Virus record (IMG/VR): IMGVR_UViG_3300049217_000071
Span: 62,001 to 126,000 of that record
Direction: 5' to 3' (one strand)
Length of the DNA: 64,000 nucleotides
Part shown: positions 9,975-61,689 of the stretch, one piece after another
Layout of the letters: each line of letters opens with the position of its first letter
Numbering within the stretch: position 1 is the stretch's first letter
Notes under the pieces: generated by a model
The model's input: only the letters and a program-made list of their open reading frames with translations
Told to the model about the DNA's origin: nothing
Databases searched by the model: none
Translations under genes and position numbers: made by a program

Positions 9975-10153
9975 TGAAAACTTTAGAACACAACCTTTAT
10001 ATTGAAGTGCAAGACACTCCTGATGGTCAAAAGATCCTGGATGAGCTAGTGGTTTGGCTCTGTGGATTGAAACACGAATATCCTAAAGCATATCTCAATG
10101 GTTGGATCGGCCCAGTCAAAGAGACTAAGAAGAAGTCCAAAAAATCAAAATGA
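9974..10153 (+). CDS. hypothetical protein (59 aa, below the ORF-track cutoff)
   Basis: MKTLEQHLY...KKSK*; stop overlaps the stub ATG at 10150. Confidence 0.6.
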   Translation: MKTLEHNLYIEVQDTPDGQKILDELVVWLCGLKHEYPKAYLNGWIGPVKETKKKSKKSK

Positions 10154-10194
10154 AATCCTTGGGCAAGCTGGTTTACTCACCACGCACCCACCTC
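10150..10194 (+). pseudogene. orphaned N-terminal stub of the 10939 gene
   Basis: MKSLGKLVYSPRTHL vs MKSIGKLVYNPRSHL at 10939. Confidence 0.9.
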
Positions 10195-10891
10195 AAGACA
10201 GATTCTGCAATGCAGAAATCTGTCCAACCTTCGCAAGAAAATTCTCTTGGGAGAGTGTTCCCTTCATTTTATTGCACGTGAAACAGCAGGATACGCAGTT
10301 GTCCAACTCATATCCTCGATCGTTATCGATTCGATCAATGCCGTTTCTAACCTCCCTGCCGACTTGTGTTTTGGTATGCGGCAGATCACCGCAATAAAAG
10401 CATCGAGCCGTGCATAGTTGTTTGAACTCATCAACAGTCATATCGAAATGAAGACTAGATTTTCTGTGCAGATCTGCCCTTCTAACGATGACCCTGGCGA
10501 CATAGGATCTGTATTCTGTGGGCCATGGGTCTTTTGAAATGGACTTTACCTTGTTATAGCAGCCACAAGATACCGTAGGAGATTTACCAGGTCCACTCTG
10601 TACTCTCAAGTTGCTAATCAATACCGTAGTGGTATTGCCACATTCACACCGGCACAATACAGTTGGGCATCCGTTTTTCCAAGTCCCTACTCTCGCTAAC
10701 ACCGTAAGCTTTCCAAACGTCTGTCCAACATACCTGTAAGGTCTTTCTGATAGGTGTGCACTCTCGATCAATCGTCTGACTGCATGTTCCGAAAGCTTCA
10801 ATCGTTTGGAAATGCTTTTTCGGCTATGACCGGCCGCCCACAGTTTGAATATCTCGTCCGTTTGAACCTGGCTAAAAACGATCCTTTTCAT
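10193..10891 (-). mobile_element. free-standing HNH endonuclease gene
   Basis: HTH, G.TFGKLTV, CRCECG, SCGC, CFYCG, NGIDRIDN..GY...NCVSCC..CN..K; GAGGTG RBS before ATG 10891. Confidence 0.9.
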
Positions 10892-10938
10892 CTTGCACCT
10901 CTCACCCATTATGCCCATATATAGCGAACAGATGCCAA

Positions 10939-11343
10939 ATGAAATCCATAGGGAAGCTAGTGTACAATCCTCGTAGTCATCTAGGATCGAGTGAAAAGTG
11001 GGCCATTTTGGCATGTGATGATGAGATTTCCAAATACTACAGGCATCTCTTCACCAAGGACTACCCGTATTTGAACGGAGAGCGAGTGGGCAAGCTGACC
11101 CGTCCGGTGTGGGGAACTCACATTTCTATCATTCGAGGGGAATATATTCCGAACTTCAAGCTATGGGGTCTGGACGCCAACAAGGTGATCGAGTTCACTT
11201 ACGAAGGTGGCGTTATAGACAACGGTGAATACTACTGGTTGAAAGTCAACTGTCCTTATATTGGAGATTTGCGCGAGAAGTATGGGTTGAAGAGGGAGCC
11301 GAAATTTGGTTTCCATTTGACTATCGGGAGAACCACAGAATGA
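10939..11343 (+). CDS. putative 2H phosphoesterase
   Basis: two Hx[ST] motifs: THISII and FHLTIG. Confidence 0.65.
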   Translation: MKSIGKLVYNPRSHLGSSEKWAILACDDEISKYYRHLFTKDYPYLNGERVGKLTRPVWGTHISIIRGEYIPNFKLWGLDANKVIEFTYEGGVIDNGEYYWLKVNCPYIGDLREKYGLKREPKFGFHLTIGRTTE

Positions 11344-11770: not shown

Positions 11771-12432
11771 TTCATCACAATGAGTTCTATCTCAGCCTAA
11801 TTAGGCACGGTCAGTCGGCCGTCAATATCCAACCGGATATGATGGGCCAAGCACCAGATACTCCCTTGACTGATAAGGGTATTTCTCAAGCAGCACTGCT
11901 GGGACAGCGTCTCAAGGGAGAGGATAAGAAGTTCGACTACGTCTTTACCTCTGACTATATTAGGGCCTACAACACCGCTAAGATTGCGATGGGAGAAGAT
12001 TATCCAATGATAGTCAGCTCCGCTCTCCGAGAATATAGTGCAGGCGATTGGGATGGGGCCTCCCGTAAAGAGATTCAGACAGAACGTCTGAAGCTAAGAA
12101 TGGCCGCTATGACCAATGCCTTCTGTCCGCCTAATGGCGAATCATTGCATATGGTGGAGCGCCGAGCCTCCCAATGGTTGGAGGATACCGTCCTCTACAA
12201 CGAAGGATTTATCAACGAAACGGCCGCTCGTCATGAGCTTGGCCTCAAGCCGATGGAGATAGCAGTTTTCTCCCACGGTATGACTATCAAGTGTCTACTA
12301 CATTACATTATGGGGTTTGATCAGAGCTTTACTTGGAAGCTCACCCTGGAAAACACATCTATCTCAAAACTACATTTTGGAATGGAAGGATGGCGATTGC
12401 TTACGATCAATGATCACGCACATTTACTATGA
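11767..12432 (+). CDS. histidine phosphatase family protein
   Basis: LIRHGQS, LRE..AG.W, P..GES, FSHG, N.SIS, ND.AHL. Confidence 0.93.
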   Translation: MIHHNEFYLSLIRHGQSAVNIQPDMMGQAPDTPLTDKGISQAALLGQRLKGEDKKFDYVFTSDYIRAYNTAKIAMGEDYPMIVSSALREYSAGDWDGASRKEIQTERLKLRMAAMTNAFCPPNGESLHMVERRASQWLEDTVLYNEGFINETAARHELGLKPMEIAVFSHGMTIKCLLHYIMGFDQSFTWKLTLENTSISKLHFGMEGWRLLTINDHAHLL

Positions 12433-12962
12433 ATGAGGTCTCCATGGGAGTCCAAGAACGAAAACGACAAAAACGAATACGAGACTATGTTATTGACCGA
12501 GATGGAATGTTGTGCTGCTACTGCGACAAGGTGTTAGAGCCAGAGACTGTCACGATGGAACATATTGTTCCAGACAGTCGAAGAGGAACTTTCAATACGA
12601 CGAACCTGACCGTCTCCTGTGCAGAATGCAACAACAGACGAGGCAACAAGCCCTTCTTTGATTACTGTAAGAAGTTCAACTTCCCGGAAGATAAACTGAA
12701 TAAGTATAAGCAACTATACTTCAACAACTTACGAATCAAGGTATTGAATATCTCCAAAGAGGAATGTCTCAAAGATGATGAGGATATTCCGGCTGCGCTT
12801 ATCAAACGAGCTTGTCAGATTCTCAAGATCAAAAGCATGGACTTTGATGATTACGAGAAGGCTTATCCCTTTGAGATAAAATTCAGTGAGCCTTGCGACC
12901 GCAGAAAGATCAAGTTTTGTTTCGAGCAATTGATCAGGATTATCGAAGAAGACAGCAAGTGA
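12429..12962 (+). CDS. HNH nuclease
   Basis: RDG..CCYC, TMEHIVP.S..G, NL..SC..CN..RG. Confidence 0.9.
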   Translation: MNEVSMGVQERKRQKRIRDYVIDRDGMLCCYCDKVLEPETVTMEHIVPDSRRGTFNTTNLTVSCAECNNRRGNKPFFDYCKKFNFPEDKLNKYKQLYFNNLRIKVLNISKEECLKDDEDIPAALIKRACQILKIKSMDFDDYEKAYPFEIKFSEPCDRRKIKFCFEQLIRIIEEDSK

Positions 12963-13341: not shown

Positions 13342-13965
13342 ATGAAGACCAAACACAACTACGTTGAATGCCATAATTGCAAGTGGAGACTTGAGCACCA
13401 GCCAGATTTTGACTGGGCCAAAAATCCTTGCCGTAGATGTAATAACGTTCGAGAGATCATTGATCCCAAAGAAGTTCTCTGCAATATGTGTGGAGAGGGG
13501 ATGTGCCACAACATAGAAGTTCCATCTGGACTCTGTAGCACTGACGATCCGCACGGCCTGTATGACGCTAAAGTTCAGGGCGGATATGATTCGTATCACT
13601 TGTTGGATATGAATGAATACACTTTCAGCTTCTGTGAGAAATGTTTGAGGCAATTGTTCATTCAGTGCAAGATCAAACCAGATGTAGTCTATATTGCTGG
13701 CGGTCATGACGAATATGGTTGGAAGCAAGATCAAGAAGGTTATGAATATCGTGTCTGGTGTGATGCGGGCTACCATCATCAAGCCTATCTCGATCGCAAG
13801 TGTAATATCGTCAAGGACTGTCCCAACCGAGCGGAGTATACGCGATTGTGCAACGATCACTTCGATGAAGACTGCTGTTGTGAAGAGCACAAACCAGATT
13901 ATAGTGGGCGTGGTAGCTATTCACTCACCAAGTTTATCCCCAACGTATTGAAACCCTTCCTGTGA
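13342..13965 (+). CDS. Cys-rich hypothetical protein
   Basis: multiple CxxC. Confidence 0.7.
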   Translation: MKTKHNYVECHNCKWRLEHQPDFDWAKNPCRRCNNVREIIDPKEVLCNMCGEGMCHNIEVPSGLCSTDDPHGLYDAKVQGGYDSYHLLDMNEYTFSFCEKCLRQLFIQCKIKPDVVYIAGGHDEYGWKQDQEGYEYRVWCDAGYHHQAYLDRKCNIVKDCPNRAEYTRLCNDHFDEDCCCEEHKPDYSGRGSYSLTKFIPNVLKPFL

Positions 13966-13971
13966 TTTTCT

Positions 13972-14283
13972 ATGGAACAGCCTGAGATATGTCCGCGTTG
14001 CCATTTAGAATGGAGCTTTCAAGATAGGTGGACTATCTGCCTCCCGTGTAATGTTGTTCTTTTCAAACACATAAAAGAAGTGTGTTGGTATAGTCCGTTG
14101 AATTCCGATTATGTTATCATGTCCAACATAGAAAACACCGCGGGCCACCCATTTTTAGCTTGGCATTACTCCCACAATATTTGTTCCTATGGATTAGATG
14201 GTGGGGGCGATCCTATTACTTTGCCCTGGCTTCCCTTCGACATAACGTCAGATCGTTTGAAACTTTTGCTACTGTTCTCGTAA
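13972..14283 (+). CDS. CxxC protein with C-terminal RLKLLLLFS
   Basis: see finding on shared C-terminus. Confidence 0.65.
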   Translation: MEQPEICPRCHLEWSFQDRWTICLPCNVVLFKHIKEVCWYSPLNSDYVIMSNIENTAGHPFLAWHYSHNICSYGLDGGGDPITLPWLPFDITSDRLKLLLLFS

Positions 14284-14287
14284 ACCT

Positions 14288-14359
14288 ATGAAACACTATC
14301 CTACTATCACCAAAGAGATTAGGCACGACCTATCAATACTTCCCTATAGTAGTATCTAA
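14288..14359 (+). pseudogene. orphaned N-terminal stub of the RNA-ligase-like gene
   Basis: MKHYPTITKEIRHDLSI vs MKLYPSIPRMQRNDIPSI at 15409. Confidence 0.75.
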
Positions 14360-14378
14360 CCAACATGGGGGTGTAGTC

Positions 14379-15449
14379 ATGGGCAAAATAGTGGGAAAGT
14401 GTATCGAATGTGGCAGAGAAAACAGACTAACACGAGGGTACTGTTCAACCTCTTGTTATTCGAGGTTGTTGCGATCTGGAAAACTGGATAGACTTCCTAT
14501 CATCCCACTTCCAAACGTTATGACTGGTCGTCAATCCGAAATGCTTACTGGACTAATGTTGGGAGATGGATGTCTATTCAAGTTCTCCGACAATGCTTTT
14601 CCGGTTCTATCGGTTGTCCGACAAAGAGGAGATGTAGGCTATTTGGATGATCGGTATCAAGAGTTCAAGTCGTTTTGTTTGAGTGGCATTCGTTTATATG
14701 AGGTCTTTGATGATCGAACGAACAAGACATATGAGGGGTGTAAGTTTACCACCAGAGGTTGCTCCGTTTTCACCCCCTTTTACGATGCGTGGTACGGTGG
14801 TGGAACAAAAACAGTACCAAGAGAGGTACGACTCTCGCCATTTGTGTGCTCTATATGGTTCTGTGATGATGGATGCGTTTTTGCAGACGATAGAAAGCGT
14901 CTCCATTTGAAACTGGCTACTCACGGTTTTCCGAATGAAGATACGGTATGGTTAGCTAAACGGCTGTCATCAAAGTTAGGAGAGCATTTCTATGTTGGAC
15001 ACGATCAGGGCCATGCATTCATTATGGCATCTGATGCGGCCACCAAGTCTTTCATTGGGTACATACAGGACATCATTCCATCCAGTATGGCTCGAAAGAT
15101 TACGTGGACAGACGAGCATTTTTTGATGGCCCGCTCTCGCCCACAGCTCAAAAACAGGCGCGTAGAGGATCTAAACGACAAGGAGTTTTCGTTGATGTCG
15201 TTTTTGTCCAGGTGCAAGTTGCCCCAATCATCCCTTGAGATGTGTACCAAAGTAGGTTGGATGGGCAAAACCGGTAGGACGCCATCAGCCTACAATAGGT
15301 ACCTGAAAAGGTTCTTGAGTGCGGGATGGATGAAGCCGACCAAGCTGGTCATACATGGTAAGAGCAACACCAAATACATGATCACTAACAAGGGAAGAGG
15401 AGTCTTACGTGAAGCTGTATCCTTCAATACCAAGAATGCAAAGGAATGA
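14379..15449 (+). mobile_element. free-standing double-motif LAGLIDADG endonuclease gene
   Basis: LTGLMLGDGC and SIWFCDDGC; C-terminal winged-helix-like tail. Confidence 0.9.
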
Positions 15450-16026
15450 TATTCCAAGCATCTACTTGTACTTGTTTGCGAAGGTCGACGGATCTAATAT
15501 CCGTGCGGAATGGAATAACAAACGAGGCTTCTACAAGTTTGGCACCCGCAATCAATTGACGGATGAGAAGACGATGCCTTTTGGCCGCTCTATCCCTTTG
15601 CTGCGAGATAAGTATGAAGCTGACCTGGCCAAGGTGTTCAAGGAGCAGGGTTGGAAGGACGCTATCTGTTTCTTCGAGTATTGGGGTGCCGAGTCTTTTG
15701 CCGGCAACCATAACTTTGAGGCCACGATGGATATTACCCTGATTGATGTCAACCCTTATAAAAAAGGAATACTGGTGCCGGTCGATTTCATCGAACTCTT
15801 CGGGCACCTTGATATACCAAGAGTTTGCTACCAAGGCCACGTCTCGACCGAGCTGTTTGACGGAGTCAAGCAATCCACTTTTCCTGGAATGACTTTCGAG
15901 GGTGTGGTGTGTAAGGGTGAGGAAGATGGTCGCATTGTGATGTTCAAGATCAAATCGCAGGCTTGGTTGGATAAATTGAGAACCTTTTGTAAAGGTGATG
16001 AAGGTTTGTTTGAGAGACTATCGTAA
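15409..16026 (+). CDS. RNA-ligase-like nucleotidyltransferase
   Basis: KVDGSN (motif I), FFEYWG, LIDV, FEGVVCK, FKIK. Confidence 0.75.
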   Translation: MKLYPSIPRMQRNDIPSIYLYLFAKVDGSNIRAEWNNKRGFYKFGTRNQLTDEKTMPFGRSIPLLRDKYEADLAKVFKEQGWKDAICFFEYWGAESFAGNHNFEATMDITLIDVNPYKKGILVPVDFIELFGHLDIPRVCYQGHVSTELFDGVKQSTFPGMTFEGVVCKGEEDGRIVMFKIKSQAWLDKLRTFCKGDEGLFERLS

Positions 16027-16034
16027 GGAATAAG

Positions 16035-17231
16035 ATGAGTAAACATAGCCCGGAAACTTGGAACGACTCCCATTTGTGGGACAGAATGACGCTCGCTCCT
16101 TCTATGGACAGCAAGAGTGAGATTAGCGCCAATTCAATCGGTATTATGCCGCTGATGAAGAAAATGTTGGAGTCTAAGGTAGGCCACCTAACTGAGTTTT
16201 ACGCAGAGGGCCATGTCAAAAAAGAAGAGCTTCAGCTGCCACAAGACAAAGAATTGCTGGCCAAACAAGACCACGGTAAGAAGTATTTGGACTGGCTTCA
16301 TGAATTGGGTGGCCGCTTGATCTACAAACACATCAGTGATGGTCAAGGCAGTACAGTCGCCATCTTTCTGTGGCAAGATTCCATAGTAGAATTCAATGTT
16401 GCTGGCACTTGGATGAGCTTCAGCGGCTTTTCTCATCAAGAAAGCTTTGTTCGAGGGATGTTGAAATCCCTCGAATCGCAATGGAAACCAACCACTGTAG
16501 CGGGTACTGTCTATGCCATCATGAGCCAGAACAGCCGTCTGAGTATGGGTTCCATAGGAAATGCCGGCATCCCGGTAGTAGAGGGCAACTACCATCCTGA
16601 GGTGATGAAAGGCTATAAATTCATTGTCAAAGACCTACAATCCTCGGCACCCTCCGGTCGCATTGTGGTAATGAAGGGTAAGCCGGGCACTGGCAAGACC
16701 CATTTGATCCGAGCTATGACTTTGGAAGTGCCAGACGCTATGTTCGTCTTGGTGTCTCCTGAGATGGTTCCCAGCCTGAGTGGTCCAGAACTATTGCCTC
16801 TCTTGTTGCAATATAAGAGTGGCGAAGGTCCTATCGTTTTGCTCTTGGAAGATGCTGACAAGTGTTTGGTAGCCAGAGACACAGACAACATCAATTCTAT
16901 CCAAGCTCTGCTGAACTTGAGCGATGGTATCTTGGGTTCCCTTTTGGACTTGCGTATTGTGGCCACTACTAATGCCGATGAGTTGGAGATGGAGCCGGCT
17001 ATGATGCGTCCAGGTCGTTTGAGTAAGATGCTAGATGTGGGGCCACTAGATGCTGAAACGGCTTGGAATATTTTCAAGCGATTGCTGCCAGATAATGATC
17101 CACCAGGTGAGTTGGCTCAAGAAGTCGCAATAACTTTGGCGGAAGTATACGCTTTGGCTCGCAAATATGGTTGGGAGCCCGAGGTTAGAAAAGTTGAAGA
17201 GAAAACCCCTGATCCGAACGAAGACTATTGA
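16035..17231 (+). CDS. AAA+ ATPase
   Basis: GKPGTGKT, LLLEDAD, LLN.SDG, TTN, RPGR. Confidence 0.92.
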   Translation: MSKHSPETWNDSHLWDRMTLAPSMDSKSEISANSIGIMPLMKKMLESKVGHLTEFYAEGHVKKEELQLPQDKELLAKQDHGKKYLDWLHELGGRLIYKHISDGQGSTVAIFLWQDSIVEFNVAGTWMSFSGFSHQESFVRGMLKSLESQWKPTTVAGTVYAIMSQNSRLSMGSIGNAGIPVVEGNYHPEVMKGYKFIVKDLQSSAPSGRIVVMKGKPGTGKTHLIRAMTLEVPDAMFVLVSPEMVPSLSGPELLPLLLQYKSGEGPIVLLLEDADKCLVARDTDNINSIQALLNLSDGILGSLLDLRIVATTNADELEMEPAMMRPGRLSKMLDVGPLDAETAWNIFKRLLPDNDPPGELAQEVAITLAEVYALARKYGWEPEVRKVEEKTPDPNEDY

Positions 17232-36813: not shown

Positions 36814-37013
36814 TGTGCACCTGTGAGAATAGAATGTGCCCCAAATGTGATCCGGGCATTGAAGCTTTCTATCAGCAAAAGCTAAAAGAAGCTGGTTCGT
36901 TTGCAGACTATATTGATGCTAAGGATGTTTGGTATGAGTATTGCGCTCTCAAAGCCGAAGAAGCGGCTGATGATGCTGTGCAACCTAAAGATGAATCGGA
37001 ATGCACTTACTAA
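36813..37013 (+). CDS. hypothetical protein
   Basis: TAATG coupling. Confidence 0.5.
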   Translation: MCTCENRMCPKCDPGIEAFYQQKLKEAGSFADYIDAKDVWYEYCALKAEEAADDAVQPKDESECTY

Positions 37014-37297
37014 TTGCTCTCCTTGCCATTTTCGGTTTAGCCTTTGCTATCAAAGAGACCTCCGGTCCTTTTGATGTCTTGGATAAGCTGCGTGGTTTAC
37101 TGATGCGAAACAAATACGTGGGAGTTTTCTTCTACGGTTTGCTTTCCTGCTATTTCTGCGTGGGTTTCCACTGCGGGTGGATCGTTTATCTATTGAGCGA
37201 GGAAAATTACACGTGGCAATTTTTTATGCTTTATGGTTTGGCTGGCGGAACGGTTTGTTTAATCATTGATGCCTTGCTCTCGAAGCTCCATCAATAA
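37001..37297 (+). CDS. membrane protein (DUF1360-like)
   Basis: GPF....LR, LLSCYFCVGFH, TM helices. Confidence 0.7.
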   Translation: MHLLIALLAIFGLAFAIKETSGPFDVLDKLRGLLMRNKYVGVFFYGLLSCYFCVGFHCGWIVYLLSEENYTWQFFMLYGLAGGTVCLIIDALLSKLHQ

Positions 37298-37964
37298 CAT
37301 TTTGTTTGGCTGATAACGGTCGCAAATTATCTAATGCCCAACATTTTTGGAAGTTAGCATCATTCATAGAAGAATAAAGCAGAGTTGATTGAGGGACAAT
37401 ATGATCAATCTGCCAAGTCCAAGTGGATGAATCATTATCATCCCAAATTTTATGATTGTACGAGCCATGATTTTGCCAGGTCATCCACGGCTCAAAATGC
37501 TTTTCGAGATGCGATTTTAATTCTTGGAAAGAATACGGAAGATATTTAGTTATCGATCCGTTTTTGGATATGGCTTTCTGAACGCTTCTACTAATAATTT
37601 TTCTCAATCGAAAAGCGATATCGTTTTGTCTTCTCTTTCTATCTTGCTCTCTTCGTATTGCCTTATGTTCTGCACGATAATTTCTGTTGTACTCTGAGAT
37701 TTTATCTTTATTCTTTTTCTTGTATGCAGATTTTCTCTTCTTCACCACTTCTGCGTGGTTCAGTCGATATCTTTTTTCGTTTTCTCTACACCGTTCTTTG
37801 TTGTTTTGGTGCCACTCAGTAGTTTTGTTATTTTGACATTCTATACAATAGGGGGCCCAATAAATAGAGATGACACCCGATTTTTTTATGTATTTTCTTT
37901 GCTTAAAGTTGTCTACTGTTAGTTCCAAACTACGATTACAGCTAATACAAATCTTGTGTTTCAT
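37263..37964 (-). mobile_element. free-standing HNH-type endonuclease gene
   Basis: CISC, YCIEC, HLEKHF..WMTW.N.G, WQIDHIVP, CWAL.NLRPL....N. Confidence 0.88.
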
Positions 37965-37988: not shown

Positions 37989-38069
37989 TTTTTTATTTTG
38001 TGGGGACTTGCGCTGCTCGTTATGAGCCTTATTATAGATGGAGTCTTGACACGTCTCCACCGTGAATAA
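37989..38069 (+). pseudogene. orphaned C-terminus of the 37001 membrane gene
   Basis: FFILWGLALLVMSLIIDGVLTRLHRE* vs FFMLYGLAGGTVCLIIDALLSKLHQ*. Confidence 0.85.
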
Positions 38070-39880: not shown

Positions 39881-40140
39881 TGAAAACAGATGACGCTCTC
39901 TATAAAGAGATACAAAAAGATATAGCTAATGGTGTAGCGGTAGTTCTTCGAGAAACTATCACATTCGATGGTATAATCAAACAGCAATATATCGTAAGAA
40001 TGTTTTTAGATGGAATCAATATTATGCTTTGGAAATACTCAGACATCACATCTAGGTGGGAATCCAAGTCAATGAGTTGGCTACAGTTGGACGCGCAAGA
40101 AATAAAGACGCTACAAACATTTCTACTCAAGTTCAACTAA
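39880..40140 (+). CDS. hypothetical protein
   Basis: TAATG coupling to PARP. Confidence 0.55.
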   Translation: MKTDDALYKEIQKDIANGVAVVLRETITFDGIIKQQYIVRMFLDGINIMLWKYSDITSRWESKSMSWLQLDAQEIKTLQTFLLKFN

Positions 40141-40806
40141 GTGGGGCCAAGTAATTCCTCTAATAGCTCGTGAGATAGCTGATTCACTAACATTTAACAT
40201 TTTGCTCAGTTGAACGAATGTCATCCCTTCTCGATGTAATTTTCGTGCTTGAAGAACGATTTCGTCGGTAAGTTTGGCAAAGCTATTGGCACTACCTAAG
40301 ATTTTTTTACCATAGAATGGATTATCGGCCCCAAAGAACTTTCTATTTGGATTTTGGCTCATTAGCTGTTTAGATTGTTGGCTGTGTTGTTTTCCGAAGA
40401 AACTGTTTCCGGCACCCTGTCTTTGTTCTGACATTGATTGTTTGGTTTCTTCTGAATGATGTTTTCCGAGCATACTTGGTGTTCGAGGTTTTATCACTAC
40501 CGTTTTGGTAGCTAACTGTCCGCCTCCCGTTAGGTTATAGCCAAACTCTTTTTTGTTAGACCGGAAAAATTGAACCCAAAATTGTTCAGCCTCATCTATT
40601 GTTTCTTTTGTGTGTTGCTCAATTTCTATAAACTCAAAATTATCTAAACCATATTTTCTGATGCTTCGATATATTGGCTTGTTGTTGAGCTTCGTGAAAG
40701 CTTCGTATTTATGGCGGCCCTGGCGCCTTTTCATATTGTTAGTTTGCCCTACATAAAGTTTTGAGTTTGTTTTGTTGCGGATAATATAGATAGAATACAT
40801 AGTCAT
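40123..40806 (-). mobile_element. GIY-YIG endonuclease gene (NUMOD3-like repeats)
   Basis: SIY.I.N..N.KLYVGQT, GYNLT.GG, GKHHSEETK, FFGKQHS. Confidence 0.92.
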
Positions 40807-45980: not shown

Positions 45981-46025
45981 ATGATTGTTGCATTCACGGG
46001 TCATCGACCTGACAAGCTGGCGTAA
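45981..46025 (+). pseudogene. orphaned N-terminal stub of the SLOG/YspA gene
   Basis: MIVAFTGHRPDKLA* vs MIVAFTGHRPEKIGG. Confidence 0.93.
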
Positions 46026-46045: not shown

Positions 46046-46750
46046 ATGAAGGCAACCGTAGAAAAAGTCATCCAAACTTATCTTGAAGTAAAAAGTATCC
46101 GTAAAGCCGCCGAATTGACAGGCTATTCAAAATCTGGTGTTCAGCATTTGTTGACGACCAATAATGTCGCCTTGTTTCCACGCAGCAGGGGTGGGGCCGA
46201 AAATTCTTCTCGCAAAGCCATTTTGGATTTGGACGCTTCTAATCCAAGAAGGTTAGTTCGTAATACCGGCTATATGACGGATTTATACATTGACAAGAAG
46301 ATGTCAGTCCCTGAAATTGCTCTCCAATTAGGAATAAGTACCGCAACAGTTTTTACTGGTTTAGAACGGTGTGGCATTGCATCAAGAACAATAGAAGAAG
46401 CATTGACCGGTAAGCCAAGGCCAGCCTCACAAGGATCCAAAAACCATAACTGGAAAGGTGGACTATCTGGCTGGAGGAAACTGGCCCGTGGTAGGCTCAA
46501 CGAACATTTTGTTCGCCCAATAATGAAACGAGATAACTTCTCCTGTCAGTGGTGTGGCTCGAAGAAGAATATCGTAGTTCATCACCACAAACGCTCGTTT
46601 ATGGAGATTGTCAATCTAGTCAGACAACAGTGTGATGAAAAAGATATAGACCAGTTTGTCAAACTCATAATTAGCGAACATTCATTAGATGACGGAATTA
46701 CGCTTTGCAAGAAGTGCCACGACAATCACCATAAGGAACACGGGAAATGA
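46046..46750 (+). mobile_element. free-standing HNH endonuclease gene
   Basis: two HTH, NHNWKGG, RDNF.CQWCG, VHH, GITLCKKCH...H. Confidence 0.9.
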
Positions 46751-47220
46751 TAGTAGCTTTTACGGGTCATAGGCCAGAAAAAATCGGAGGATACAGACTC
46801 CCTAACCCCACTTACATTCACGTCTGTCAAGAGATCGAAAAGACTCTGACGGAACTCCGGCCCTATATGGTCATCACGGGAATGGCTTTGGGTGTCGACC
46901 AATGGGCAGCTAACATAGCCCGTAAGATGAAGATTCCTTATATCGCTGCCATTCCTTTCGAGGGCCAAGAGTCCAAATGGCCTAAGCGGAGTCAGCGGAC
47001 TTATCGCGCTCTCCGTAAGCTGGCTATGGGTGAAACCATTGTCAGCCCTGGAGAGTACTCGGTAGAGAAGATGCAGATCCGTAATCAGTGGATGGTAGAT
47101 AACGCGGATGCCGTCATTGCCGTGTGGGATGGAACTCGGGGTGGAACCAAGAACTGTATTGAGTATGCTAAATCTCAGAACAAGCAAATTTATTACATTG
47201 ACCCGCGCCTTGACAAGTGA
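46747..47220 (+). CDS. SLOG superfamily YspA/DUF1273 protein
   Basis: FTGHRP, GMALGVDQWAA, PF.GQ...W, RN.WMVD, VWDG..GGT.NC..YA. Confidence 0.9.
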   Translation: MIVAFTGHRPEKIGGYRLPNPTYIHVCQEIEKTLTELRPYMVITGMALGVDQWAANIARKMKIPYIAAIPFEGQESKWPKRSQRTYRALRKLAMGETIVSPGEYSVEKMQIRNQWMVDNADAVIAVWDGTRGGTKNCIEYAKSQNKQIYYIDPRLDK

Positions 47221-60933: not shown

Positions 60934-61115
60934 TTTTTGAGGTGGGAGCCAGACTATGGATTTGTGATACCTGTGGTATAGAAGTATTATTACAAGTACG
61001 CAATTACTCTGCTGGCCCTCCAGAAGGCTGGACTATGAGAAGAGAGCGGCTTCATTGGTACTCTCTTCCAATCATCAAATGCTATTGTTCTGAATGCTCC
61101 AGCGTTTCCCATTAA
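60930..61115 (+). CDS. small Zn-finger protein
   Basis: CDTCG...PEGW...CSEC. Confidence 0.6.
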   Translation: MIFEVGARLWICDTCGIEVLLQVRNYSAGPPEGWTMRRERLHWYSLPIIKCYCSECSSVSH

Positions 61116-61689
61116 CAATGCGTGAAATTTGTGCGGCAGACAGGCTGAATATTCTACAAAGTTCAGCCTGTTTATATTTGCCTGTGGCAAACAGGTCGCA
61201 TATTTCTTTTACCTGCTCTTTGGTAATTTTTGCTCTTACTTTAAGTAAAGCTTCTTTTACATGAGACTTCATACTATTTCCATAGTTGCCATTAGCCTTA
61301 CCAAACAGTTGAACGCCATGCATTGGATTACCTTCGCCTGAATTCAATCTGCTCATACGCCGTTTACGCTCTTCAGTCCATTTAGTACCAGTCACCCCAT
61401 CGCCACCATCCGTTTCATTGTATACTTGATAAGAGTTTTCTTTTAGAAATTTGATCCATTCAGCTTCTCTATCATTAGCTTGCTCTTTGGTTTCTAATTC
61501 CTCAATTACTTTGAAGGCAAACTTATCGGCACCATATTTGTTTATGGCGCAATGAACCGCGTATCTCTTTTTAGATTTGGCATCTGATTTATGGCGCTTC
61601 CAACGCTCCCTGGGATTATTGGTAATTCCTACGTAAAGCTTGCCATTAATTGTATTGAATATCAGATATAAATAAAACATTACCTTCAT
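61075..61689 (-). mobile_element. GIY-YIG endonuclease gene
   Basis: YLY.I.N.INGKLYVGIT, YNETDGG, C-terminal HTH. Confidence 0.92.

What the first reader, a model, noticed from the sequence alone, without database searches (positions are those of the whole stretch)
14288..15500. LAGLIDADG overprints a new N-terminus for the RNA-ligase-like gene
Stub MKHYPTITKEIRHDLSI precedes the LAGLIDADG. The functional gene starts MKLYPSIPRMQRNDIPSI inside the last 41 nt of the LAGLIDADG ORF, in another frame, just ahead of the catalytic KVDG motif. It is more diverged than the other cases, as expected under dual-coding constraint. An imperfect hairpin (about 14338-14374) may cover the GGGGG RBS.
Basis: partly seen in the sequence, partly recalled or inferred. 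Interest (0 to 1): 0.72.

Follow-up and report, generated by a model that had tools for sequence, protein, structure and literature searches.

The report
Homing endonuclease carrying a replacement gene start
A selfish LAGLIDADG homing-endonuclease gene has inserted into the start of a jumbo phage's small RNA-ligase-like gene and carries its own foreign copy of that gene's first ~27 codons, so the ligase stays intact while the original start is left as a dead 15-codon stub; this mirrors a trick known from fungal mitochondria.

Summary
A stub ORF (14288-14359), a 356-aa LAGLIDADG_2 gene (14379-15449) and a 205-aa RNA-ligase-fold gene (GTG at 15409, 41-nt overlap) lie as described.

The family begins MKxYPSITKE.R.D.YIYAFDK.DGS in 114 of 119 homologues. 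The stub is the native start: 15/15 residues and 45/48 nt match the syntenic endonuclease-free relative L001.

The working N-terminus was not created by overprinting. It is a homologous foreign copy that travels with the endonuclease. Codons 1-30 are 59% identical to L001 and 64-70% identical to other endonuclease-bearing alleles; the rest of the gene is 86% against 58-71%.

The overprinted piece is the endonuclease's last 11-13 residues, which are read out of frame from the ligase start. This overlap is conserved in six loci whose endonucleases share only 44-54% identity.

The cassette (~14332-15489) replaces ~28 nt that run into the KxDG motif, which is probably the target site.

Cassette pieces are 99-100% identical in soil and lake metagenomes, while most flanking pieces are 85-97% identical. 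This suggests recent mobility.

The proposed hairpin is not supported (z -0.79).

The closest analogue is the fungal mitochondrial mobile ORFs that carry replacement C-termini. I rate this a new variant of a known kind. Cleavage and ligase activity are untested.

The parts
13972..14283 (+). Upstream 103-aa ORF of unknown function. It forms the left homology arm and is conserved upstream of the ligase gene in the endonuclease-free relative L001.
   Evidence: The DNA alignment with L001 runs through this ORF into the stub. One lake-water contig lacks the ORF and joins 13958 to 14285.
14288..14332 (+). Native remnant of the ligase gene: the original start codon plus codons 2-15 (MKHYPTITKEIRHDL).
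   Evidence: 15/15 aa identical to P0002. 45/48 nt identical to L001. 50 bits against the family N-terminus matrix.
14288..14359 (+). Stub ORF of 23 codons. The native remnant reads on into element sequence and stops at TAA 14357-14359, 19 nt before the endonuclease start.
   Evidence: Comparable stubs stop 10-31 nt before the endonuclease in L008, L075 and L076.
14332..15489 (+). The inserted mobile cassette, with boundaries good to about ±3 nt. It contains a 5' leader, the LAGLIDADG gene and an imported ligase 5' coding segment. It replaces about 28 nt of the native gene (codons 15-24, up to the Asp of KxDG).
   Evidence: Homology to L001 breaks at ~14331/14332 and resumes at ~15490. Wild-type alleles in metagenome contigs become similar to the window exactly at 15490 and 15498.
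14332..14378 (+). Cassette leader. It is homologous among endonuclease-bearing loci (CTATCAATA...GTATC...).
   Evidence: Alignments. Fold statistics (z -0.79).
14379..15449 (+). Free-standing LAGLIDADG_2 homing-endonuclease gene, 356 aa. It has an N-terminal four-Cys segment, two LAGLIDADG motifs (LGDG 61-64 and CDDG 162-165) and a C-terminal ~115-aa extension.
   Evidence: Pfam PF03161 E 6e-19. phrog_11023. Invariant columns in the alignment of 14 homologues. Single copy in the 268-kb virus record.
15394..15402 (+). Shine-Dalgarno-like GAAGAGGAG for the ligase restart, 6 nt before GTG 15409. It lies inside endonuclease codons G-R-G.
   Evidence: Purine-rich GGAAAG / GGGAGG stretches sit at the same place in five other loci.
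15409..15449 (+). Dual-coding overlap of 41 nt. Ligase codons 1-13 are read in a second frame as the endonuclease tail (R)EAVSFNTKNAKE*.
   Evidence: An overlap of 32-41 nt is conserved in L006, L007, L008, L075 and L076. Endonuclease relatives that lack this tail end where the overlap starts; the one whose context was fetched (L077) is not next to a ligase gene.
15409..15489 (+). Imported foreign 5' coding segment of the ligase gene, codons 1-27. It has three extra codons relative to the native type, including the tandem TACTTG TACTTG at 15463-15474.
   Evidence: Mosaic identity profile. The same +3-codon allele type occurs in L002, L003, L006, L007 and L079.
15409..16026 (+). Hybrid RNA-ligase-fold gene, 205 aa, consisting of a nucleotidyltransferase domain only. 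Motif I KVDG lies at 15481-15492. From about codon 28 onward the sequence is native.
   Evidence: 1634 homologues of 202-205 aa. AlphaFold2 pLDDT 90.5. Foldseek top hits are T4 Rnl1, TbREL1, Naegleria RNA ligase and T4 Rnl2. dN/dS is 0.074 against L001.

Best explanation
This is a free-standing LAGLIDADG homing-endonuclease cassette inserted inside the 5' end of a jumbo phage's small RNA-ligase-fold gene. The cassette keeps the gene whole by carrying its own copy of the gene's start.

Likely mechanism:
1. Inferred: the endonuclease cuts endonuclease-free alleles in the ~28-nt stretch that encodes (F/Y)IYAFDK.D. This stretch sits just before and into the catalytic KxDG motif.
2. Inferred: the break is repaired from an endonuclease-bearing genome. 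The left homology arm is the upstream ORF plus ligase codons 1-15. The right arm is the ligase body from the Gly of KxDG onward.
3. Shown: what lies between the arms is the cassette. It comprises a ~47-nt leader, the endonuclease gene and a foreign version of ligase codons 1-27 with its own Shine-Dalgarno and start codon. That start is embedded in the endonuclease's last codons.
4. Shown: the recipient's first 15 codons remain as a stub that ends 19 nt before the endonuclease start.
5. Inferred: the full-length ligase is made from GTG 15409.
6. Inferred: the foreign segment differs from the native target, with three extra codons and many substitutions. This difference would protect the invaded allele from being cut again.
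7. Speculative: the stub retains the ligase's original expression signals, and these may now drive the endonuclease.

The 41-nt overlap is an old, conserved feature of this cassette. The endonuclease's C-terminal tail reads out of frame across the ligase start, not the other way round.
For: Anatomy.

The stub is native.
- It matches P0002 at 15/15 aa and L001 at 45/48 nt, at the orthologous position in an otherwise syntenic endonuclease-free locus.

The gene is a mosaic.
- Codons 31-end are 86% nt identical to L001 and 58-71% to endonuclease-bearing alleles.
- Codons 1-30 are 59% identical to L001 and 64-70% to the endonuclease-bearing alleles.

The architecture recurs.
- In all five other loci fetched for the closest endonuclease homologues (44-54% identical; L006, L007, L008, L075, L076) the endonuclease lies immediately upstream of this ligase gene. 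The ligase start sits inside endonuclease codons L-[DNRS]-E.
- Stubs are clear in L008, L075 and L076.
- More distant endonuclease homologues lack the tail. The one whose context was fetched, L077, lies elsewhere.

The imported start persists without the endonuclease.
- L002 keeps only the last ~30 endonuclease codons, yet the ligase is full length.
- In L078 the endonuclease carries a nonsense change at window position 15286 while the ligase is intact.
- L079 carries the imported allele type with no endonuclease at all.

The ligase looks functional.
- All nucleotidyltransferase motif columns are invariant and present.
- dN/dS is 0.074.
- The model is confident and has an RNA-ligase fold.
- Residues 1-10 of the model are disordered, which suggests the swapped tail is tolerant of change.

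There are signs of mobility.
- Contig pieces from three other metagenomes that lie on the cassette show 5 differences in 1920 nt.
- Most flanking pieces are 85-97% identical, though some X3 and X5 flank pieces are about 99%.
- Two single contigs bridge a near-identical cassette and a diverged flank.
- Loose ends of wild-type alleles place the right boundary at 15490 and 15498.

The analogue is documented: mitochondrial mobile ORFs with replacement C-termini (PMC3630166).
Against: - No cleavage, homing, transcription or translation has been measured. The target site is inferred only from where homology breaks.
- The ligase restart uses GTG.
- The low dN/dS could largely predate the insertion.
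- In L008 the ligase downstream of the endonuclease has a frameshift at KxDG. In L014 the ligase body is gone. The gene is therefore dispensable in some relatives and may not be protected everywhere.
- No stub was recognised in L006 or L007, so the stub is not a necessary part of the element.
- The metagenome contigs are short and may mix strains. Several flank pieces in X3 and X5 are themselves about 99% identical. The contrast between cassette and flanks rests mainly on two bridging contigs and on X4.
- How the first stub-forming insertion arose is unknown.
Confidence: 0.8

Rival explanations
1. Dead-end insertion. The endonuclease disrupted the ligase gene, the downstream ORF from 15409 is not translated or is inactive, and the similarity of its first codons to the family N-terminus is a passive leftover.
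For: - GTG start and no expression data.
- The ligase is frameshifted in L008 and deleted in L014, so it is dispensable in some relatives.
- A distant ligase paralogue exists elsewhere in the genome, 34% identical.
Against: - The ORF is full length and every invariant family column is kept.
- A Shine-Dalgarno lies 6 nt upstream.
- dN/dS is 0.074.
- The same restart is conserved in six loci whose endonucleases have diverged to 44-54% identity.
- The imported start outlives the endonuclease in L002 and L078.
Confidence: 0.1
2. The endonuclease ORF created a new N-terminus by overprinting, and the divergence of that N-terminus results from dual-coding constraint.
For: - The 41-nt overlap is real.
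- Within the overlap the ligase departs from otherwise invariant family residues. For example, Lys9 is 100% conserved in the family but is Arg here.
Against: - The new N-terminus is homologous to the family N-terminus at M1, K2, Y4, P5, S6, I7, R12 and D14.
- The same allele type exists with no endonuclease (L079).
- Divergence and three extra codons extend 13-15 codons beyond the overlap.
- Endonuclease relatives that lack the tail stop where the overlap begins, and the one whose context was fetched (L077) lies away from any ligase gene. The endonuclease tail is therefore the newer reading.
Confidence: 0.06
3. Intron or other splicing element. The stub is exon 1, and an RNA or protein splicing event joins it to the ligase body.
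For: LAGLIDADG genes often live in group I introns or inteins. Joining the stub after codon 17 to YLFAKVDG would restore the native spacing to the catalytic lysine.
Against: - No Rfam intron match in 13900-16100 even at E up to 10, and none across the window at gathering score.
- Only ~47 nt lie upstream of the endonuclease ORF and ~40 nt downstream, too little for a ribozyme core.
- Stop codons in the stub frame rule out an intein.
- The downstream copy has its own complete start.
- L002 and L079 make the full-length gene with no stub.
Confidence: 0.02

Closest known systems
Mitochondrial mobile ORFs (mORFs) that form hybrid genes: Allomyces macrogynus atp6; Glomus atp6, atp9, cox2 and nad3; Rhizopus atp9; Mortierella cox2 (PMC3630166 and references therein)
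   Same: - A free-standing LAGLIDADG or GIY-YIG gene travels with a foreign copy of one end of its target gene.
- The hybrid gene stays intact.
- The native end is left as an orphan that resembles close relatives far more than the inserted copy does. Here the figures are 94% against 59% nt; in Glomus they are 91-98% against 64-81%.
   Different: - Here the N-terminus is replaced, not the C-terminus, so the cassette must also supply a ribosome-binding site and a start codon.
- It does so by embedding them in the endonuclease's own last codons, giving a conserved 32-41 nt dual-coding overlap.
- The host is a jumbo phage, not a mitochondrion.
- The orphan lies upstream and may now serve endonuclease expression.
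- A mirror-image C-terminal version does occur in relatives of this phage (L019, L014).
Intronless homing by free-standing endonucleases of T4-like phages (seg and mob genes; PMC2988022)
   Same: - A free-standing endonuclease gene lies next to the gene it targets.
- It spreads by double-strand-break repair with co-conversion of flanking sequence.
- The invaded allele differs at the target site.
- Distribution among related phages is sporadic.
   Different: - T4 seg and mob genes sit between genes or split a gene into two working polypeptides. They are not described as carrying a duplicate of a gene end.
- Most are GIY-YIG or HNH enzymes, not LAGLIDADG.
Split genes created by endonuclease insertion (mobE in Aeh1 nrdA, mobA in T4 gene 39/60; PMC2988022)
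   Same: An endonuclease gene lies inside a conserved coding region close to catalytic residues, and host function is retained without an intron or intein.
   Different: In those cases both fragments are needed and reassemble as subunits. Here the upstream fragment is a 15-codon relic made redundant by the imported copy.
Group I intron- or intein-encoded LAGLIDADG endonucleases
   Same: The enzyme family is the same, and conserved catalytic-site codons of an enzyme gene are targeted.
   Different: No ribozyme or intein is present. Neutrality is achieved at the DNA level by duplicating the gene end, not by splicing.
ATP-dependent RNA ligases (T4 Rnl1 and Rnl2, TbREL1, Naegleria Rnl5-type)
   Same: The target gene's product has the nucleotidyltransferase fold with motifs I (KVDG), III, IIIa, IV and V.
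   Different: It is only 205 aa and has no C-terminal or N-terminal substrate-binding domain. Sequence similarity is weak: PF09414 is reached by 26 of 42 family members but not by this protein. Activity and substrate are unknown.

Membership tests
Free-standing LAGLIDADG homing endonuclease gene | LAGLIDADG fold with two motifs and their acidic residues | tested here: met
   PF03161 E 6e-19 over residues 54-223. LGDG 61-64 and CDDG 162-165 fall in invariant columns across 14 homologues.
Free-standing LAGLIDADG homing endonuclease gene | Sporadic presence at one genomic site among close relatives | tested here: met
   Absent from the syntenic loci L001, L004 and L005. Present at the same site in L006, L007, L008, L075 and L076. 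114 of 119 listed ligase homologues have the uninterrupted canonical start.
Free-standing LAGLIDADG homing endonuclease gene | Not embedded in an intron or intein | tested here: met
   No Rfam intron at E up to 10. The ORF has its own Shine-Dalgarno and ATG. Stop codons separate it from the stub frame.
Free-standing LAGLIDADG homing endonuclease gene | Site-specific cleavage of the endonuclease-free allele, with the invaded allele resistant | not testable with these tools
   The target is inferred only from the ~28 nt replaced between the homology breaks.
Free-standing LAGLIDADG homing endonuclease gene | Evidence of lateral spread: element much more similar than its flanks | tested here: inconclusive
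   Cassette pieces show 5 differences in 1920 nt across three other metagenomes. Most flank pieces are 85-97% identical, but some in X3 and X5 are about 99%. Two bridging contigs link a near-identical cassette to a diverged flank. Contigs are short and may mix strains.
mORF-type hybrid gene (gene-end replacement by a mobile endonuclease ORF) | Two copies of one gene end flank the endonuclease ORF, one continuous with the gene and one orphaned | tested here: met
   Stub at 14288-14332 and working copy at 15409-15489.
mORF-type hybrid gene (gene-end replacement by a mobile endonuclease ORF) | The orphan copy is native and the working copy is foreign | tested here: met
   The stub is 45/48 nt identical to L001. 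Working codons 1-30 are 59% identical to L001 and 64-70% to other endonuclease-bearing alleles, while the gene body is 86% identical to L001.
mORF-type hybrid gene (gene-end replacement by a mobile endonuclease ORF) | The replaced end is the C-terminus, downstream-duplicated as in all described cases | tested here: not met
   Here the N-terminus is replaced and a new translation start is supplied. This is why I call it a variant and not a member. The C-terminal form occurs in L019 and L014.
mORF-type hybrid gene (gene-end replacement by a mobile endonuclease ORF) | The hybrid gene is expressed and the orphan is not part of the product | not testable with these tools
   No RNA run was shown to hold this sequence.
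ATP-dependent RNA ligase / covalent nucleotidyltransferase superfamily | Motif I KxDG and motifs III, IIIa, IV and V | tested here: met
   K25, D27, G28; F88, F89, E90; F97, A98, G99; E164, G165, V167, K169; F179, K180, K182 are invariant columns in 42 sequences and are present in the window protein.
ATP-dependent RNA ligase / covalent nucleotidyltransferase superfamily | Nucleotidyltransferase fold | tested here: met
   Model pLDDT 90.5. The top 30 Foldseek PDB hits are almost all RNA ligases, with probability 1.0 and query TM about 0.6.
ATP-dependent RNA ligase / covalent nucleotidyltransferase superfamily | Passes the curated family profile (PF09414) | tested here: inconclusive
   The window protein has no Pfam hit at E 0.01. 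26 of 42 relatives match weakly, best E 1.8e-6. phrog_548 'RNA ligase' matches at E 8e-8.
ATP-dependent RNA ligase / covalent nucleotidyltransferase superfamily | Lysine adenylylation and strand-sealing activity; an accessory nucleic-acid-binding domain | not testable with these tools
   Activity is untested. The protein is 205 aa and the model shows no accessory domain.
Group I intron with internal endonuclease ORF | Ribozyme core flanking the ORF | tested here: not met
   Searches find none. Less than 50 nt of non-ORF sequence lies on either side.

The most novel reading that the evidence does not exclude
Jumbo phages of this group may use a general way, not described for phages as far as I could find, for homing endonucleases to live inside protein-coding genes without introns or inteins. 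Each cassette carries a resistant replacement copy of the invaded gene's start or end. In the N-terminal form the new start codon and ribosome-binding site are written into the endonuclease's own last codons. The orphaned native start may be taken over to express the endonuclease. This one window holds four such events involving LAGLIDADG and HNH/EndoVII-type genes, and the same ligase gene is attacked at both ends in relatives. Such gene-end swapping would continually graft foreign termini onto phage enzymes.
Probability: 0.45. Interest if true: 0.7.

Novelty: new variant of a known kind. Interest (0 to 1): 0.55.

Why it matters
It shows a third way, besides self-splicing elements and split genes, for a phage homing endonuclease to sit inside a conserved coding region without killing the gene. 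The endonuclease brings a spare gene end.

- Annotation: short 'hypothetical' ORFs before endonuclease genes may be relic gene starts. Genes called after such endonucleases may be chimeras whose first codons have a different history from the rest.
- Evolution: this is a route for very short-tract horizontal replacement at enzyme active-site borders. It also gives a clean natural example of a conserved dual-coding overlap whose direction of origin can be read.
- Practical use: the cassette points to a probable ~28-bp natural target next to the KxDG motif. That gives a testable specificity for a new LAGLIDADG enzyme.

Tried and rejected
- Group I intron or other RNA family: Rfam at gathering score over the whole window and at E up to 10 over 13900-16100 gave only tRNAs and one chance snoRNA hit.
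- Hairpin over the endonuclease ribosome-binding site: not better than shuffles in the window, and no consensus structure across six loci. Only L007 has a convincing hairpin (z -4.55).
- Promoter and terminator scan of 13900-16100: no more sites than in shuffled sequence.
- Named phage records: only one 83-nt match to an uncultured 635-kb phage, so there was no annotated relative to lean on.
- Sequence search of the ligase against PDB, as a single sequence and as a profile: nothing meaningful. The fold search was needed.
- My first reading of a 'decayed stub' in L006 (MNYLSIF...) was withdrawn. That stretch is the conserved cassette leader, not ligase sequence.
- The idea that the leader is itself a degraded copy of the target half-site (16 of 33 nt matches to L001) is suggestive but too weak to claim.
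- Literature searches for a phage precedent of an endonuclease with a duplicated gene start found none. The library is incomplete, so this is not proof of absence.
Full report
**What is in the sequence**

The window comes from a 268-kb IMG/VR virus record estimated at about 62% complete. It carries many tRNA genes. Relatives lie on contigs of up to about 490 kb, so this is a jumbo phage known only from metagenomes. The source appears to be a moss metagenome.

Between 14288 and 16026 on the + strand lie three ORFs:
- a 23-codon ORF at 14288-14359, MKHYPTITKEIRHDLSILPYSSI*;
- a 356-codon ORF at 14379-15449;
- a 205-codon ORF at 15409-16026 that starts with GTG and overlaps the previous ORF by 41 nt in another frame.

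The middle ORF is a LAGLIDADG_2 endonuclease (Pfam E 6e-19; PHROG 'homing endonuclease with LAGLIDADG motif'). Both LAGLIDADG motifs fall in invariant alignment columns.

**The downstream gene**

It belongs to a large family: 1634 hits, nearly all 202-205 aa.
- Sequence profiles label it only weakly. phrog_548 'RNA ligase' matches at E 8e-8. PF09414 is matched by 26 of 42 relatives but not by the window protein.
- An AlphaFold2 model is confident, with pLDDT 90.5. Its best PDB matches are ATP-dependent RNA ligases: T4 Rnl1, TbREL1, Naegleria RNA ligase and T4 Rnl2, all at probability 1.0.
- The lysine of KVDG and the residues of motifs III, IIIa, IV and V are invariant columns and are present.

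It is a bare nucleotidyltransferase domain. 'RNA-ligase-like' is a fair name, but activity is untested.

**Which N-terminus is the family's?**

Of the 119 listed homologues other than the near-identical P0001, 114 begin with the consensus MKSYPSITKEIRHDIYIYAFDKLDGS, with the catalytic lysine at position 22.
- The stub matches the closest homologue P0002 at 15 of 15 residues.
- It scores 50 bits on a matrix built from those 114 sequences. The working N-terminus scores 18-22 bits.

P0002's contig, L001, is syntenic with the window in gene order: His_Phos, HNH, Cpn10, two small ORFs, ligase, AAA ATPase. It has no endonuclease.
- DNA alignment runs through the upstream 103-aa ORF and the first 45 nt of the stub (45/48 identical), then breaks at about 14331/14332.
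- Similarity resumes at about 15490, the Gly codon of KVDG.
- Metagenome contigs that carry wild-type alleles become similar to the window exactly at 15490 and 15498. Their preceding letters encode YIYAFDKLD and YAFSKLDGS.

So about 1158 nt (14332-15489) replace about 28 nt of the native gene.

**The working N-terminus is imported, not invented**

A codon-wise identity profile shows a mosaic.
- From codon 31 onward the window gene is 86% nt identical to L001, but only 58-71% identical to alleles that carry the endonuclease.
- In codons 1-30 it is 59% identical to L001 and 64-70% identical to those alleles. This includes L007, whose gene body is only 58% identical.

The imported segment keeps the family's invariant M1, K2, Y4, P5, I7, R12 and D14. 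It has three extra codons before the lysine, including a tandem TACTTG TACTTG. The same allele type appears in L002, L003, L006 and L007. It also appears in L079, where the gene directly follows the upstream ORF with no endonuclease and no stub. The divergence continues well past the 41-nt overlap, so dual-coding constraint cannot be its main cause.

**The overlap is old, and its direction can be read**

The closest endonuclease homologues are 44-54% identical. In all five other loci fetched for them (L006, L007, L008, L075, L076) the endonuclease sits immediately upstream of this ligase gene. The ligase start (ATG or GTG) is embedded in endonuclease codons L-[DNRS]-E, giving an overlap of 32-41 nt.

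The ligase's invariant YPSI is read in the other frame as the endonuclease's (I/V/L)SFN. More distant homologues of the endonuclease lack this tail and end where the overlap begins. The one whose context was fetched, L077, lies away from any ligase gene. The endonuclease's last 11-13 residues are therefore the overprinted novelty, and the ligase start is the older reading.

**Stubs recur**

L008, L075 and L076 each have a short ORF beginning MK(S/H)YPSI(T/P)K, 10-31 nt upstream of the endonuclease start. No stub was recognised in L006 or L007. What first looked like one in L006 is the conserved cassette leader.

The usual architecture is: native stub, leader, endonuclease, overlapped imported start, native body. 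With this layout the stub and its upstream gene can serve as the left homology arm during homing. That last point is inference.

**Signs of the endonuclease life cycle**

- L002 has lost all but the last ~30 codons of the endonuclease but keeps the imported start and a full-length ligase.
- L078 is an independent NCBI assembly, 98.7% identical to the window. Its endonuclease carries a nonsense change at window position 15286, and its ligase is intact.
- L008 has a frameshift at the KxDG codons of the ligase.
- Contig pieces from soil and lake-water metagenomes that lie on the cassette show 5 differences in 1920 nt. Most flank pieces are 85-97% identical, though some in X3 and X5 are about 99%.
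- One contig joins an upstream flank with 26 differences in 175 nt to stub plus endonuclease with 4 differences in 469 nt. That contig also lacks the 103-aa ORF.
- Another contig bridges the endonuclease 3' end and a ligase body with 75 differences in 943 nt. The listed differences begin at 15445.

This fits recent lateral spread. The contigs are short and strains may be mixed, so I treat this evidence as suggestive.

**Is the ligase still functional?**

- The ORF is full length and all motifs are intact.
- A GAAGAGGAG Shine-Dalgarno lies 6 nt before the GTG.
- dN/dS against L001 over the native body is 0.074, with dS 0.71.
- Residues 1-10 of the model are disordered and residues 11-20 are of low confidence. 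The swapped tail is therefore probably tolerant of change.

None of this proves translation or activity.

**Rejected or unsupported points**

- No intron was found.
No shared structure emerges from six loci. L007 alone has a strong hairpin at the equivalent place (z -4.55).
- Hairpins that sequester the ribosome-binding site are a known control of T4-type endonuclease genes (PMC2988022). The idea is reasonable but is not shown here.

**Comparison with what is known**

The closest precedent is the mitochondrial mobile ORFs of Allomyces, Glomus, Rhizopus and Mortierella. There a LAGLIDADG or GIY-YIG ORF arrives with a foreign C-terminal segment of atp6, atp9, cox2 or nad3 and leaves the native C-terminus as an orphan (PMC3630166). 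The logic here is the same, as is the signature of native orphan and foreign working copy.

The differences are the end replaced (N-terminal), the need for a new translation start and its solution (a start written into the endonuclease tail), and the host (a phage).

T4-type free-standing endonucleases share the homing logic. In the review read here they sit between genes or split them into subunits. Three literature searches found no phage case with a duplicated gene start. The library is incomplete.

I therefore rate this as a new variant of a known kind.

**Wider pattern**

The same window holds three more endonuclease ORFs, of HNH/EndoVII type by PHROGs, each flanked by a short duplicate of a neighbour's end. 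In relatives L019 and L014, a shorter LAGLIDADG gene (33% identical) sits at the 3' end of this same ligase gene with an orphan C-terminal stub downstream. Gene-end replacement therefore looks like a common habit of endonucleases in this phage group.

Noticed in passing
window 10150-10194 vs 10939-10983; intervening ORF 10193-11014 (-): A second stub case. A 15-residue peptide, MKSLGKLVYSPRTHL, is 80% identical to the start of the 2H-phosphoesterase-like gene at 10939. Between them, on the opposite strand, lies an HNH/EndoVII-type ORF (PHROGs E 1e-16).
   Followed up: partly
window 45981-46019 vs 46747-46785; intervening ORF 46046-46750 (+): A third stub case. MIVAFTGHRPDKL is 85% identical to the start of the YpsA/SLOG-family gene at 46747. 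An HNH endonuclease ORF (phrog_8446, E 5e-19) lies between them, and its stop overlaps the gene's ATG.
   Followed up: partly
window 37220-37294 vs 37989-38063; intervening ORF 37263-37964 (-): A C-terminal version. The last 25 residues of the 98-aa ORF at 37001-37297 recur, 52% identical, about 700 nt downstream. An EndoVII-like ORF lies on the opposite strand between them.
   Followed up: partly
L019:2-1021 and L014:2468-3332: In relatives, a shorter LAGLIDADG gene of 240-256 aa, 33% identical to the window's, sits at the 3' end of the same ligase gene. An orphan 31-residue ligase C-terminal stub lies downstream of it. In L014 the ligase body is absent and only Cpn10, endonuclease, stub and AAA ATPase remain.
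   Followed up: partly
L008:3528-3610: The ligase downstream of the endonuclease has one extra base in the codons of KxDG, which breaks the frame at the catalytic lysine. This could be a pseudogene, a repair scar at the presumed cut site, or a homopolymer sequencing error.
   Followed up: no
L078:1-372 (window 15037-15408; change at window 15286): An independent NCBI assembly, 98.7% identical to the window, has a stop codon inside the endonuclease (..GRTP*AYN..). Its ligase remains intact, so the endonuclease appears to be decaying in a sister strain.
   Followed up: partly
L002:492-629: Only the last ~30 codons of the endonuclease survive, overlapping a full-length ligase gene of the imported N-terminus type. 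This looks like a footprint of endonuclease loss.
   Followed up: partly
L003:3452-3530: An imported-type N-terminus (MKSYPSIPRMVREQIPSGYFYLFG*) stands out of frame with the ligase body, with no endonuclease nearby. The cause may be a frameshift or a scar, and remains unexplained.
   Followed up: no
window 13959-14284: A lake-water contig joins 13958 directly to 14285. It thus lacks the 103-aa ORF, and its upstream flank is only about 85% identical, while its stub plus endonuclease are 99% identical to the window.
   Followed up: no
window 15407 (metagenome run X3, contig record 6): One contig matches the window from 15407 onward at 94% identity. It is preceded by about 600 nt of unrelated sequence ending ..GTGCAAAGCATGCGGTCATTGGGATGACGA. 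A different upstream element may therefore be attached to the same imported ligase start.
   Followed up: no
window 12429-12962: This HNH endonuclease ORF occupies the same position, between His_Phos and Cpn10, in L001, L004, L006, L008 and L014. Unlike the LAGLIDADG gene it is not sporadic and may be a fixed or domesticated nuclease.
   Followed up: no
window 40123-40806 (-) and 61075-61689 (-): Two GIY-YIG plus NUMOD3 endonuclease genes. With the HNH and LAGLIDADG genes, the 64-kb window holds at least seven nuclease ORFs of homing type.
   Followed up: no
G000:C1:52570-53181 (outside the window): A distant paralogue of the ligase-like gene, 34% identical (E 3e-16), lies about 25 kb upstream in the same virus record.
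   Followed up: no
L007:2459-2494: A perfect 12-16 bp hairpin lies immediately 5' of, and reaches into, the endonuclease's GAGAGGAA ribosome-binding site (z -4.55). It resembles the translational control hairpins of T4 endonuclease genes.
   Followed up: partly
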